DNA of 42,724 nt from Octopus bimaculoides (lineage: Eukaryota). Positions 5,957 to 42,134 of this stretch are shown piece after piece. The number at the start of each line of letters is the position of its first letter. Position 1 is the first letter of the stretch. Below the pieces are notes generated by a model. That model saw nothing but the letters and a program-made list of their open reading frames with translations, searched no databases and was not told where the DNA came from. The stretch is from contig NC_068990.1 in the NCBI RefSeq assembly GCF_001194135.2, forward strand, positions 46,249,020 to 46,291,743. The letters run 5' to 3'. The position numbers and the translations under genes were made by a program.

Positions 5957-6625
5957 NNNNNNNNNNNNNNNNNNNNNNNNNNNNNNNNNNNNNNNNNNNN
6001 NNNNNNNNNNNNNNNNNNNNNNNNNNNNNNNNNNNNNNNNNNNNNNNNNNNNNNNNNNNNNNNNNNNNNNNNNNNNNNNNNNNNNNNNNNNNNNNNNNNN
6101 NNNNNNNNNNNNNNNNNNNNNNNNNNNNNNNNNNNNNNNNNNNNNNNNNNNNNNNNNNNNNNNNNNNNNNNNNNNNNNNNNNNNNNNNNNNNNNNNNNNN
6201 NNNNNNNNNNNNNNNNNNNNNNNNNNNNNNNNNNNNNNNNNNNNNNNNNNNNNNNNNNNNNNNNNNNNNNNNNNNNNNNNNNNNNNNNNNNNNNNNNNNN
6301 NNNNNNNNNNNNNNNNNNNNNNNNNNNNNNNNNNNNNNNNNNNNNNNNNNNNNNNNNNNNNNNNNNNNNNNNNNNNNNNNNNNNNNNNNNNNNNNNNNNN
6401 NNNNNNNNNNNNNNNNNNNNNNNNNNNNNNNNNNNNNNNNNNNNNNNNNNNNNNNNNNNNNNNNNNNNNNNNNNNNNNNNNNNNNNNNNNNNNNNNNNNN
6501 NNNNNNNNNNNNNNNNNNNNNNNNNNNNNNNNNNNNNNNNNNNNNNNNNNNNNNNNNNNNNNNNNNNNNNNNNNNNNNNNNNNNNNNNNNNNNNNNNNNN
6601 NNNNNNNNNNNNNNNNNNNNNNNNN
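5957..6625. other. Assembly gap (N run). Other gaps: 14140-14149, 15428-16348, 21607-22038, 23444-23878, 29402-29411, 30634-30643, 33679-33885, 38170-38576, 41212-42103
   Basis: Runs of n, mostly bounded by microsatellites or repeats. Confidence 0.99.
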
Positions 6626-8440: not shown

Positions 8441-8887
8441 TGCGGGCTGCCAACCAAATTTAAAGAATCCGTCCTTCCTTTGTCGTAGACAAGAGCGACT
8501 TCGACGGAGTTATGATGTTAGCACGTGCTAAATAAGACCCCCTCATAACTTTTTCCGAATTTTCACAAACTTTTTTCGATTTTGTCTTCTGCAAAATGTA
8601 ATTTATACGATTATGCCAAAAAAAAAAAATGTTTTTAAAATTTCTCCTATCCCCCAAAACTTTCCACTGTTTTTCTATTTCTTGTTTTAACTCCCGGTTT
8701 TAAAATACGGACAATCCGATTCTGCCATTTGTTTCTCTTTATACATAATTTCCGCATAGTTTTTTAAATACTTCAAAATCAGAATTGAAAAAGTCTTAAA
8801 CAATCGCGCATGCGCGTGTAAGAGAAAAATCATTTACTAACAGAAAATTATGTTAATAAAATAAAGTATCTGTAACATACCTTTAAA

Positions 8888-9470
8888 TTATTGCGGATAA
8901 ACTTCCGCTATGTGCTTTATAACCATATTGTAATTCTCCCAAGAATTGTTTACATTTCATACCATAATAATCCCTATAGATCGACATTCGACCGGAGCAT
9001 ATATCTCCACTAGATCCACATATATATTTCAGTCTCAGGTTAATTCGTGCCCGTCTGGATAGATTTTTATAGCTGGGCCACATATCCGTAAAAATAGTGG
9101 ACCCTATTATTATTTTCAATAATGACCGCTTCTAGTGTCGCTGCTTTTCGGCCAGGAACAAGTTGCAGGTAACCCTTCATTACCGTGTTATATATTCCAA
9201 GTATCCAAAACTTCTTCACCACTTTTCCAACTTCATTTTCCCTCTTAAAAGAAGGCTTTCGTCTACTTGGACTATATGATTCGAGCCACCTAATTTCTTC
9301 TTGTCTTTCAATAATTTTGGCGTACGTATTTCTCTGCAATATTCGTACCACTGGACGGCTGTCTGCTAATATTGTTCAAGGACATGCAGCTTGTCACTGG
9401 CATTTCACATATGAAGTCAAGGATTATGTGAAAAAGTGTGAATACCGTCAATTGACTTTTTTCCACAGAC
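8888..9470 (-). pseudogene. Merlin transposase remnant (DDE region and C-terminus), frameshifted and internally deleted
   Basis: With frameshifts: SVEKSQLTVFTLFHIILDFICEMPVTSCMSLNNISRQ / AVQWYEYCREI..KLLKDKKKLGGSNHIVQVDESL / KRENEVGKVVKKFWILGIYN..KGYLQLVPGRKAATLEAVII / GSTIFTDMWPSYKNL / ARINLRLKYICG / WENYNMVIKHIAEVYPQ*. Confidence 0.9.
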
Positions 9471-9480
9471 GAAAGCCTTC

Positions 9481-9653
9481 TCGTCTCATTTTGTAGATCC
9501 CGTGTCTGATGTGTTTACAAACAACGTGGAACCATACTGAGCACGAATTAAACGGTGACTGAAGAATGTATGTGGATTTTGTGGAGATATGAGACAATTC
9601 TTGAGAGAATTACAGTGTTTATAAAGCACTTAGCGGAAATTTATCTGCAATAA
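9481..9653 (+). pseudogene. Second, oppositely oriented Merlin transposase C-terminal remnant
   Basis: SHFVDPVSDVFTNNVEPY*ARIKR*LKNVCG...ENYSV/IKHLAEIYLQ*. It contains the FVDP..TNxVE motif that the left arm lacks. Confidence 0.85.
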
Positions 9654-10464
9654 TTTAAAGGTATGTTACAGATACTTTATTTTAATAACATAATTTTCTG
9701 TTAGTAAATGAATTTCTCTTATGCGCGCATGCGCGATTGTTTAAGACTTTTTCAATTCGGATTTCGATGAATTCAAAAAAAAAATATTTGGAAATTATAA
9801 AGAGAAACGAATAGTAGAATCGGACTGTCCGTATTTTAAGAAAAAAATAATAGAAAAACTGGGGGGTATGGGGGCGAGCAATTAAAAATAATTTTTTTTT
9901 TTTTTTGCATAATCGTATTAATTCCATTATGGAGAAGACAGAATCGAAAATCTTTTGTGAAAATTAGTAAATATAAAAAAGCTATGAGGAATTTTAGCAC
10001 GTTTTAGCATCATAACTCCGCTGCGACTTCTGTTGCTTCTGGTCTCCGGGTACGCATTATCATCCTTACTTCTATCATGAGCTAGTAATGCTGTGTACAA
10101 AGTTATGATAATAGAAGCAGTAGAGTGACCGAATAATTGCCTGGTTGTATTTCATTTCATCCCTTTCCTTTCGGTTGGTTCCTTAAAAAGCTTAAAATTC
10201 AAATAGTCTGCGGGTCGACTTTGCCATTTTATCGTTTGACAGCAGAAGGATTATATTCTGGAGGGAGAGGTTGTTCAGTCTGCTGGGAATAGTTTCCAAA
10301 TCTCTCTCAAATCGCACCTTAATTTACCATCGCAAATTAAGATTACAATGAGGGAACGGTCACAGTTGGAACGCCATTAATTGTAGGTTTAATTGGTATT
10401 CAGTTAGGATCCAGTGCTCAGATGGAGCCGACAAGGAGCTAAACGGTTGTACAGCGGCAATGTC

Positions 10465-10465
10465 C

Positions 10466-10517
<52 letters not shown>

Positions 10518-10518
10518 G

Positions 10519-10554
<36 letters not shown>

Positions 10555-41150: not shown

Positions 41151-42134
41151 GACATATATATGACTAACTGCAGGTGGAAATTCTGAAGACTCGGGCTTAA
41201 CATGCTTAATANNNNNNNNNNNNNNNNNNNNNNNNNNNNNNNNNNNNNNNNNNNNNNNNNNNNNNNNNNNNNNNNNNNNNNNNNNNNNNNNNNNNNNNNN
41301 NNNNNNNNNNNNNNNNNNNNNNNNNNNNNNNNNNNNNNNNNNNNNNNNNNNNNNNNNNNNNNNNNNNNNNNNNNNNNNNNNNNNNNNNNNNNNNNNNNNN
41401 NNNNNNNNNNNNNNNNNNNNNNNNNNNNNNNNNNNNNNNNNNNNNNNNNNNNNNNNNNNNNNNNNNNNNNNNNNNNNNNNNNNNNNNNNNNNNNNNNNNN
41501 NNNNNNNNNNNNNNNNNNNNNNNNNNNNNNNNNNNNNNNNNNNNNNNNNNNNNNNNNNNNNNNNNNNNNNNNNNNNNNNNNNNNNNNNNNNNNNNNNNNN
41601 NNNNNNNNNNNNNNNNNNNNNNNNNNNNNNNNNNNNNNNNNNNNNNNNNNNNNNNNNNNNNNNNNNNNNNNNNNNNNNNNNNNNNNNNNNNNNNNNNNNN
41701 NNNNNNNNNNNNNNNNNNNNNNNNNNNNNNNNNNNNNNNNNNNNNNNNNNNNNNNNNNNNNNNNNNNNNNNNNNNNNNNNNNNNNNNNNNNNNNNNNNNN
41801 NNNNNNNNNNNNNNNNNNNNNNNNNNNNNNNNNNNNNNNNNNNNNNNNNNNNNNNNNNNNNNNNNNNNNNNNNNNNNNNNNNNNNNNNNNNNNNNNNNNN
41901 NNNNNNNNNNNNNNNNNNNNNNNNNNNNNNNNNNNNNNNNNNNNNNNNNNNNNNNNNNNNNNNNNNNNNNNNNNNNNNNNNNNNNNNNNNNNNNNNNNNN
42001 NNNNNNNNNNNNNNNNNNNNNNNNNNNNNNNNNNNNNNNNNNNNNNNNNNNNNNNNNNNNNNNNNNNNNNNNNNNNNNNNNNNNNNNNNNNNNNNNNNNN
42101 NNNAAACAATAAACTACTGCAGTCTATGTTTTAA

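What the first reader, a model, noticed from the sequence alone, without database searches (positions are those of the whole stretch)
8495..10030. Fold-back Merlin transposon made of two inverted transposase 3' ends that apparently moved as one unit
Seen: the ~550-bp inverted arms are not just TIRs. Each arm carries the transposase C-terminus and its stop codon (IKHIAEVYPQ* on minus, IKHLAEIYLQ* on plus), followed by the same downstream end. The arms are complementary in their deletions: the left has LGG..IVQVDES, WILG and TDMWPSY but lacks FVDP..TNNVE, which only the right has. A perfect 8-bp direct repeat GCGACTTC flanks the whole unit. Known: Merlin elements make 8-9-bp TSDs and normally have short TIRs around one ORF. 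Inference: a head-to-head rearrangement produced an element with two 'right' ends that was still mobilised in trans. This would show that Merlin ends are interchangeable, and the element could make a long hairpin RNA if transcribed.
Basis: partly seen in the sequence, partly recalled or inferred. Interest (0 to 1): 0.72.

Follow-up and report, generated by a model that had tools for sequence, protein, structure and literature searches.

The report
Decayed fold-back Merlin transposon remnant
A dead 1.5-kb Merlin DNA transposon has lost its front end, which is replaced by a flipped partial copy of its own back end; derivatives built this way are already described for other transposons, and this single copy cannot show that it ever jumped in this form.

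Summary
A perfect 8-bp direct repeat, GCGACTTC, sits at 8495-8502 and 10023-10030. It brackets a 1520-bp unit whose outer ~550 bp are inverted repeats (87% identical in aligned columns, 13 indels). Both arms run from a Merlin/IS1595-type transposase C-terminus and stop codon out to the same element end. The minus-strand copy covers about aa 65-295 of the closest intact-looking relatives (Octopus bimaculoides proteins) and lacks aa ~211-241. The plus-strand copy covers only about aa 217-295. The N-terminal 64 aa and any 5' end are absent.

Two canonical relatives with accessible DNA are compact: about 1.2 kb, TIRs of 27-46 bp, GG termini.

This "both arms from one end" structure was described for the Goblin/Ozma Tc1-mariner element. 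There it was explained by template switching between TIRs during gap repair at the donor site. That route keeps the progenitor's TSD, so the TSD does not prove that the fold-back moved as a unit.

No other copy is in the window. The source genome could not be searched, so copy number, an empty site and small RNAs remain untested.

Verdict: a real feature, a new member of a known kind. The mobilisation claim is unproven. Interest is modest.

The parts
8495..8502 (.). Left copy of the 8-bp target-site duplication, GCGACTTC
   Evidence: Exact match to 10023-10030. The 8-mer occurs 3 times in the window against 0.43 expected.
8503..9050 (-). Left inverted arm: the element's 3' terminus, its subterminal/3'-untranslated region and the C-terminal coding part. 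It pairs with 10022-9541.
   Evidence: Global alignment: 467 aligned columns, 12.8% substitutions, 13 indels. BLASTN E=2e-91.
8503..8532 (.). Left terminal inverted repeat, GACGGAGTTATGATGTTAGCACGTGCTAAA. The first GG is at 8506-8507, 3 nt inside the TSD boundary.
   Evidence: 25/28 match to the reverse complement of 9993-10020. The sequence was read.
8781..8893 (.). Best-conserved block of the arms (4.5% diverged against about 16% elsewhere), just downstream of the stop codon. It contains the palindrome CGCGCATGCGCG.
   Evidence: Segment statistics with Fisher p=0.005, a post-hoc segmentation. Perfect complementary runs of 35, 26 and 38 bp start at 8782, 8830 and 8857.
8888..9481 (-). Minus-strand Merlin transposase pseudogene. 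It covers about aa 65-295 of the octopus relatives, spread over three reading frames with stop codons. The stop is at 8888-8890, the first catalytic D (VQVDES) at 9261-9263 and the second D (TDMWPSY) at 9084-9086. About aa 211-241, which include the catalytic E block, are deleted.
   Evidence: tblastn of the octopus consensus and of database proteins P0001-P0007, P0010 and P0018. Homology search E=2e-17 to a PF12762 protein.
9464..9487 (.). Head-to-head junction zone between the two transposase fragments. It contains the 15-mer AGACGAAAGCCTTCT (9467-9481), a perfect inverted copy of the VDESLL codons at 9250-9264.
   Evidence: The minus-strand hit ends at 9481 and the plus-strand hits start at 9442-9487. 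The 15-mer occurs twice in the window against 0.01 expected.
9482..9653 (+). Plus-strand Merlin transposase fragment covering about aa 217-295. It carries SSHFVDPVSDVFTNNVE (catalytic E codon 9529-9531), ARIKR*LKNVCGFCGDM and FIKHLAEIYLQ, with the stop at 9651-9653. It has internal stops and a deletion of about 48 nt relative to the left arm.
   Evidence: tblastn hits 9442/9481-9594 and 9603-9644. Six-frame translation. Arm alignment.
9541..10022 (+). Right inverted arm: the C-terminal coding part, the subterminal region and a second 3' terminus. The terminal repeat ends ...TTTAGCATCATAACTCCGCT, with CC at 10018-10019.
10023..10030 (.). Right copy of the 8-bp target-site duplication, GCGACTTC

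Best explanation
This is an old, dead, non-autonomous Merlin (IS1595-like DDE) transposon. Its 5' end and the first ~64 codons have been replaced by an inverted partial copy of its own 3' part: codons ~217-295, the 3' subterminal region and the 3' TIR.

The most likely origin is a template switch during repair synthesis, either gap repair by SDSA after excision or a stalled fork:
1. A nascent strand copied one short TIR.
2. It re-annealed to the identical TIR at the other end.
3. It copied the 3' region inward.
4. It was then joined to the strand coming from the true 3' end, at about 9464-9487.

After that, both arms decayed neutrally, each acquiring its own deletions. The 8-bp repeat is a genuine Merlin target-site duplication. 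It may belong to the normal progenitor, in which case the fold-back was born here. It may instead belong to the fold-back itself, in which case it transposed here. I put these at roughly 55:45, and nothing available here decides between them.

Shown: the architecture, the transposase homology, the TSD, the neutral decay and the hairpin potential. Inferred: the template-switch origin. Unknown: whether the fold-back ever moved.
For: - Architecture: the minus copy covers aa 65-295 and the plus copy aa ~217-295. No trace of aa 1-64 is found anywhere in the window.
- One 8/8 direct repeat brackets the whole unit.
- Canonical relatives with DNA are compact. The T. szidati element is about 1.16 kb with a 27-bp TIR. 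The ENA metagenome element is about 1.25 kb with 38-46-bp TIRs. Both have GG ends and 8-9-bp TSDs, and neither has subterminal inverted homology. Short, near-identical TIRs are the homology that the switch needs.
- A published precedent has the same geometry and this model. In Goblin, both subterminal arms come from the right end of Ozma, with different lengths, and this is explained by the newly made left TIR switching to the right TIR during SDSA (PMC3814204). Template switching in TIR-element gap filling is documented across metazoans (PMC8277862).
- A 15-nt perfect inverted copy of the VDESLL codons sits exactly at the junction (0.01 expected). This is typical of multi-step switching, or it marks the original inner end of the right arm.
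- Arm-to-arm coding substitutions fall 8/4/4 on codon positions 1/2/3, with no third-position excess. The arms therefore diverged as pseudogenes after formation.
Against: - No progenitor sequence from the same genome was available, so the 5' end, the exact breakpoints and any microhomology cannot be defined.
- Divergence along the arms is uneven: 4.5% in 8781-8893 against about 16% elsewhere (p=0.005, post hoc). Pure neutral decay does not predict this. It could mean gene conversion between the arms, or arms taken from two different copies.
- The element termini are atypical. GG lies 3 nt inside the 8-bp repeat at both ends, and the outermost 2 nt of the two ends are not complementary.
- There is one copy only.
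Confidence: 0.6

Rival explanations
1. One reading: the fold-back formed elsewhere, was recognised through its two 3' TIRs by a transposase supplied in trans, and integrated here as one unit, creating the GCGACTTC duplication.
For: - A perfect 8-bp TSD brackets the composite exactly.
- Both ends carry the same terminal repeat.
- In canonical relatives the two TIRs are near-identical, so a 3'/3' element should be a substrate.
- Goblin-type fold-backs did amplify in Aedes (PMC3814204).
- From my own knowledge, not checked here: a mariner Mos1 construct with two 3' ends transposes better than the natural configuration.
Against: - Birth of the fold-back at the donor site of a normal progenitor leaves exactly the same TSD, so the TSD does not discriminate.
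- There is no second copy in 42.7 kb, even with a profile search.
- No near-identical ORFs turned up in the protein collection (20 candidates, 1 hit).
Confidence: 0.4
2. The family's normal architecture includes very long TIRs that contain the inverted 3' coding region, and this copy is an ordinary internal-deletion derivative.
For: Merlin TIRs of 24-462 bp have been reported (PMC8101967, citing Feschotte 2004).
Against: - The right arm runs colinearly about 540-560 bp from the terminus (10022 back to about 9467-9487), and about 600 bp or more once its deletions are restored. That takes it into the catalytic core, through the E block and the VDESLL 15-mer. This is longer than any reported Merlin TIR.
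- Two relatives have 27-46-bp TIRs only.
- The octopus proteins show a normal N-terminus.
Confidence: 0.07
3. Two independent Merlin insertions landed side by side or nested in opposite orientation and then lost their 5' parts. The flanking 8-mer match is coincidence.
For: - The arms are 13% diverged with many indels, and the divergence is uneven.
- Each arm has its own deletions.
Against: - An 8/8 match placed symmetrically at both outer boundaries has a chance probability of about 1e-4.
- Nested insertion would leave one 5' end and one 3' end on the outside, not two 3' ends.
- There is no internal TSD.
- The codon-position pattern fits post-formation decay.
Confidence: 0.03
4. Assembly artefact: a chimeric contig joined two Merlin copies from different loci at about 9470.
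For: The window is a gap-rich scaffold with 10 runs of N, which suggests a short-read assembly. Inverted repeats are hard to assemble.
Against: - There are no Ns between 6626 and 14139.
- The arms are too diverged (87%) to be collapsed or confused.
- Only 15 nt are shared at the junction.
- A chimera would not give matching 8-bp flanks.
Confidence: 0.03

Closest known systems
Goblin, a Stowaway-like MITE derived from the Tc1/mariner element Ozma in Aedes aegypti (Yang et al. 2013, PMC3814204)
   Same: - Both subterminal arms derive from the same (right) end of the progenitor, with different lengths.
- The arms meet head to head.
- The progenitor class has short TIRs.
- The proposed origin is a template switch between TIRs during gap repair.
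   Different: - The superfamily is different: Merlin/IS1595 with an 8-bp TSD, against Tc1/mariner with a TA TSD.
- The window element is 1.5 kb and still carries recognisable transposase coding sequence in both arms.
- Neither a progenitor nor any other copy is documented here.
Canonical Merlin elements (Feschotte 2004; PMC8101967). Examples read here: the T. szidati element in L001 and the ENA metagenome element in L002-L004.
   Same: - An IS1595-type DDE transposase, with the D (VDES), D (TDxW) and NxxE blocks.
- An 8-bp TSD.
- A GG near the termini.
   Different: - Canonical elements are about 1.2 kb with one intact ORF of about 291-295 aa between 27-46-bp TIRs, GG at the very end, and distinct 5' and 3' subterminal regions.
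- The window element has two 3' ends, no 5' end, no N-terminus and about 550-bp arms.
Palindromic or hairpin MITEs with long TIRs (for example C. elegans PALTA/Cele families, Tc7, Arabidopsis Hairpin), as listed in PMC3814204
   Same: The whole element is essentially a fold-back, although the related autonomous elements have short TIRs.
   Different: Those families are short, have high copy numbers and have lost coding traces. This element is long, is single in the window, and its origin can be read from its coding remnants.
Drosophila Foldback (FB) and Galileo long-TIR elements
   Same: Long inverted arms and hairpin potential.
   Different: FB and Galileo arms are built from tandem subrepeats or are part of the family's regular structure. 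They belong to other superfamilies. Here the arms are unique transposase-derived sequence.

Membership tests
Merlin superfamily (eukaryotic IS1595/IS1016-like DDE transposons) | Transposase with a DDE_Tnp_IS1595 (PF12762) domain | tested here: met
   The evidence is indirect but strong. A stitched minus-copy translation hits an O. bimaculoides PF12762 protein at E=2e-17. Nine PF12762 proteins, including T. szidati P0006, hit both strands by tblastn. A direct Pfam scan of the degraded fragments gave no hit.
Merlin superfamily (eukaryotic IS1595/IS1016-like DDE transposons) | 8- or 9-bp target-site duplication | tested here: met
   GCGACTTC is 8/8 identical at 8495-8502 and 10023-10030.
Merlin superfamily (eukaryotic IS1595/IS1016-like DDE transposons) | TIRs with a conserved terminal 5'-GG-3' (PMC8101967) | tested here: inconclusive
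   GG is at 8506-8507 and CC at 10018-10019, which is 3 nt inside the 8-bp repeat on both sides (GAC|GG ... CC|GCT). In relatives L001 and L002 the GG directly abuts the TSD. If the ends are placed at the GG, the alternative TSD ACTTCGAC/GCTGCGAC matches only 6/8.
Merlin superfamily (eukaryotic IS1595/IS1016-like DDE transposons) | Single transposase ORF between short TIRs, with a complete DDE triad | tested here: not met
   There is no intact ORF. The minus copy has both D blocks but lacks the E block. The plus copy has only the E block and the C-terminus. Codons 1-64 are absent. It is a non-autonomous derivative, not a canonical member.
One-ended fold-back derivatives made by TIR-to-TIR template switching (Goblin type) | Both arms colinear with the same end of the progenitor, with unequal lengths, joined head to head | tested here: met
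   Both arms run from the C-terminus and stop codon out to the terminus. The inner ends are at aa ~65 (left) and aa ~217 (right).
One-ended fold-back derivatives made by TIR-to-TIR template switching (Goblin type) | A progenitor in the same genome with short TIRs and a distinct other end | not testable with these tools
   The source genome could not be reached. Only distant relatives could be read, and they do have short TIRs.
One-ended fold-back derivatives made by TIR-to-TIR template switching (Goblin type) | Microhomology or filler at the junction, in inverted orientation on the progenitor | tested here: inconclusive
   A 15-nt perfect inverted repeat (9250-9264 / 9467-9481) lies at the junction, with 0.01 expected. 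Without the progenitor sequence it cannot be classed as microhomology, filler or the inner end of the arm.
One-ended fold-back derivatives made by TIR-to-TIR template switching (Goblin type) | Amplified family: several copies with the same junction and different TSDs | not testable with these tools
   The window holds no second copy, and no genome search was possible.
Drosophila Foldback (FB) family | Arms composed of tandem subrepeats | tested here: not met
   The arms are unique sequence derived from the transposase and its 3' region. No tandem families were reported in 8503-10022.

The most novel reading that the evidence does not exclude
The unit is one member of an amplified fold-back Merlin family in a cephalopod-like genome. 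It would be mobilised through two 3' ends, and its transcripts would form a hairpin of about 500 bp that feeds small-RNA silencing of the autonomous Merlin. The unusually conserved 112-bp block next to the stop codon would then be a functional site.
Probability: 0.1. Interest if true: 0.55.

Novelty: new member of a known kind. Interest (0 to 1): 0.3.

Why it matters
Most long-TIR or hairpin MITEs have lost all trace of how they arose. This element keeps transposase coding sequence in both arms, so its one-ended fold-back origin can be read directly. It would extend a mechanism documented for Tc1/mariner to the Merlin superfamily. If other copies exist, it would also be a clean natural test of whether two identical ends are enough for Merlin transposition, and a candidate source of hairpin small RNAs. 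As a single decayed copy it is mainly a good annotation case: repeat annotators could mis-call it as two Merlin fragments.

Tried and rejected
- A Pfam scan of the degraded translations gave no hit. Homology had to come from protein searches.
- A 32-mer that is perfectly conserved in both arms was searched in the metagenome, viral and prokaryotic genome collections. All three gave 0 hits.
- The look-up of encoding contigs found nothing on record for octopus protein P0001 or for two ORFs of the element.
- The flanks were searched against the rest of the window to rebuild an empty site from paralogous repeats. Only microsatellite matches came back.
- A profile (nhmmer) search of the arms against the window found the two arms only.
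- The third protein search used a retrotransposon RT fragment to try to identify the organism. It returned only unnamed ENA proteins at 58-75% identity.
- Feschotte 2004 is not held in the paper library.
- I considered and rejected an alternative TSD directly abutting the GG termini (ACTTCGAC/GCTGCGAC, 6/8). The 8/8 repeat is much less likely to be chance.
- I considered that the arms came from two actively evolving copies. The 8/4/4 codon-position pattern argues against it, but it rests on only 16 substitutions.

Full report
**Observation**

The region was read directly. The 8-mer GCGACTTC is present at 8495-8502 and again at 10023-10030. It occurs three times in the 42.7-kb window against 0.43 expected from shuffles. 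An exact 8/8 match placed symmetrically at both boundaries of an inverted repeat has a chance probability of roughly 1e-4 (my estimate).

Between the two copies lie 1520 bp. Their outer parts are inverted repeats: 8503-9050 pairs with 10022-9541 (BLASTN E=2e-91). A global alignment gives 467 aligned columns, 60 substitutions (12.8%, K2P 0.14) and 13 indel events.

Six-frame translation shows 'VIKHIAEVYPQ*' on the minus strand (stop 8888-8890) and 'FIKHLAEIYLQ*' on the plus strand (stop 9651-9653). Each is followed outward by the same ~385-bp subterminal sequence and the same terminal repeat.

**What the coding remnants are**

A Pfam scan of the degraded translations found nothing. A stitched translation of the minus copy hit an Octopus bimaculoides 'ISXO2-like transposase domain' protein carrying PF12762 (DDE_Tnp_IS1595) at E=2e-17. 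A second search returned seven more O. bimaculoides fragments, a 295-aa Trichobilharzia szidati protein and several metagenomic Merlin-type proteins, nearly all with PF12762.

I ran tblastn with a consensus of the octopus fragments and with the database proteins themselves. Both map the element as follows:

- The minus strand, 9481 down to 8894, covers aa ~65-295 in three frames with stop codons.
  - It has the first catalytic D in VQVDES (9261-9263) and the second in TDMWPSY (9084-9086).
  - It lacks aa ~211-241, the 'NHS.FVDP..HTN.IE' block that holds the catalytic E.
- The plus strand, about 9482-9653, covers aa ~217-295.
  - It includes SSHFVDPVSDVFTNNVE (E codon at 9529-9531).
  - It lacks about 48 nt that the left arm retains.
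- No match to aa 1-64 exists anywhere in the window.

The unit is therefore [3' end]-[transposase aa 295 to 65, minus strand]-junction-[aa 217 to 295, plus strand]-[3' end]. It has two right ends, no left end, and cannot be autonomous.

The closest proteins point to a cephalopod-like host. I could not name the organism.

**The junction**

The two fragments meet between about 9464 and 9487. Exactly there lies AGACGAAAGCCTTCT (9467-9481). It is a perfect inverted copy of the VDESLL codons of the minus copy (9250-9264), with two occurrences in the window against 0.01 expected.

There are two readings. The right arm may once have reached inward to aa ~137 and later lost aa 143-216. Alternatively the 15-mer is filler or homology from an extra template switch. 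Without a progenitor sequence I cannot decide.

**Comparison with canonical Merlin**

According to PMC8101967 (summarising Feschotte 2004), Merlin elements have TIRs of 24-462 bp with a terminal 5'-GG and TSDs of 8-9 bp. I fetched two relatives with accessible DNA:

- The T. szidati element (L001) is about 1.16 kb, with 27-bp TIRs starting GG and a 7/8 8-bp TSD.
- A metagenomic element present in three contigs (L002-L004) is about 1.25 kb, with 38-46-bp perfect TIRs starting GG and an 8-9-bp TSD.

Neither has inverted homology beyond the TIR. The window element is therefore not the normal architecture of its relatives.

One oddity remains. In the window the GG lies 3 nt inside the 8-bp repeat at both ends (GAC|GG...CC|GCT), and the two outermost nucleotides of the ends are not complementary.

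**How it arose**

The same geometry has been published. In Goblin, both subterminal arms derive from the right end of the progenitor, with unequal lengths. Yang et al. 2013 (PMC3814204) explain it as follows:

1. After excision, gap repair copies the element from the sister chromatid.
2. The newly made left TIR switches to the right TIR of the template.
3. The right subterminal region is then copied in inverted orientation.
4. The released ends are joined.

The authors suggest this is how long-TIR and hairpin MITEs arise in general. Template switching during gap filling in TIR elements is also documented across metazoans (PMC8277862). The short, near-identical TIRs of canonical Merlins provide the homology this switch needs.

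This process happens at the donor locus, so the product sits between the progenitor's own TSD. The GCGACTTC repeat therefore proves that a Merlin integration happened here. It does not prove that the fold-back was what integrated.

**Decay**

Substitutions between the arms in the shared coding part fall 8/4/4 on codon positions 1/2/3 (16 sites). There is no third-position excess, which fits neutral divergence of two pseudogene arms after formation rather than arms taken from two separately evolving active copies.

With 13% arm divergence, an intact 8/8 TSD is unremarkable: 0.87^8 is about 0.33 (my estimate).

One observation does not fit simple neutral decay. The 113 bp next to the stop codon (8781-8893), which contain the palindrome CGCGCATGCGCG, are 4.5% diverged against about 16% in the distal arm (Fisher p=0.005, post-hoc segmentation). 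Gene conversion between the arms, a mutational cold spot or chance could explain this.

**Hairpin potential**

Folded as RNA, 8503-10022 has an MFE of -646 kcal/mol against -310 +/- 13 for 20 shuffles. There are 419 arm-to-arm base pairs and perfect duplex runs of 35, 26 and 38 bp. Whether it is transcribed or processed could not be tested.

**Rivals**

- Trans-mobilisation as a unit remains quite possible (about 0.4). It needs other copies, and none is in the window.
- A family with intrinsically very long TIRs is unlikely. The right arm runs well into the catalytic core, further than any reported Merlin TIR, and relatives have short TIRs.
- Two independent insertions would require the 8/8 flank match to be chance and would not place two 3' ends on the outside.
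- An assembly chimera would not give matching flanks. The arms are too diverged to be confused, and there are no Ns between 6626 and 14139.

**Verdict**

The feature is real and correctly described. It is a decayed, one-ended fold-back derivative of a Merlin transposon. This is a known kind of product, apparently not yet described for Merlin as far as the papers I could read go. The claim that it moved as one unit is untested.

The decisive step is to search the source genome for the junction and for the autonomous consensus. That was not possible with the tools offered for this window.

Noticed in passing
window 10431-11000: Long imperfect trinucleotide arrays: CAT/GAT-type repeats on one side and the complementary TGG/TGA type on the other. 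They form mutual inverted repeats (for example 10464-10536 against 10847-10919, 75-82% complementary) and start about 400 bp to the right of the element. They translate as His/Asp runs but look like microsatellite, not a gene.
   Followed up: no
window 20060-21514: Remnants of an LTR-type retrotransposon: a reverse-transcriptase fragment ('LKSAYLQLHVSEKLW...FGLSSAPK') and an integrase-like 'HHMGVDRT' piece. The closest proteins are unnamed ENA sequences, several with PF00078, at 58-75% identity.
   Followed up: partly
window 8781-8893 and 9648-9760: The block just outside the stop codon is much better conserved between the arms (4.5% against about 16% divergence). It contains the 12-bp palindrome CGCGCATGCGCG and an AG|GTATGT splice-donor-like motif right after the stop. 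It could be a functional subterminal site or a gene-conversion patch.
   Followed up: partly
window 8503-8507 and 10018-10022: The conserved Merlin terminal GG lies 3 nt inside the TSD boundary at both ends (GACGG / AGCGG), and the outermost 2 nt are not complementary. In two canonical relatives the GG abuts the TSD.
   Followed up: partly
whole window: There are ten runs of N (for example 5957-6625, 15428-16348, 41212-42103), abundant (CA)n, (TC)n and other microsatellites, and no convincing host exon. It is a gap-rich, repeat-rich scaffold of about 35% GC.
   Followed up: no
L002-L004 (ENA metagenome contigs): An apparently intact, recently active Merlin element: 99.5-99.7% identical copies in three contigs, a 291-aa ORF, 38-46-bp perfect TIRs and an 8-9-bp TSD. 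The host is unknown.
   Followed up: partly
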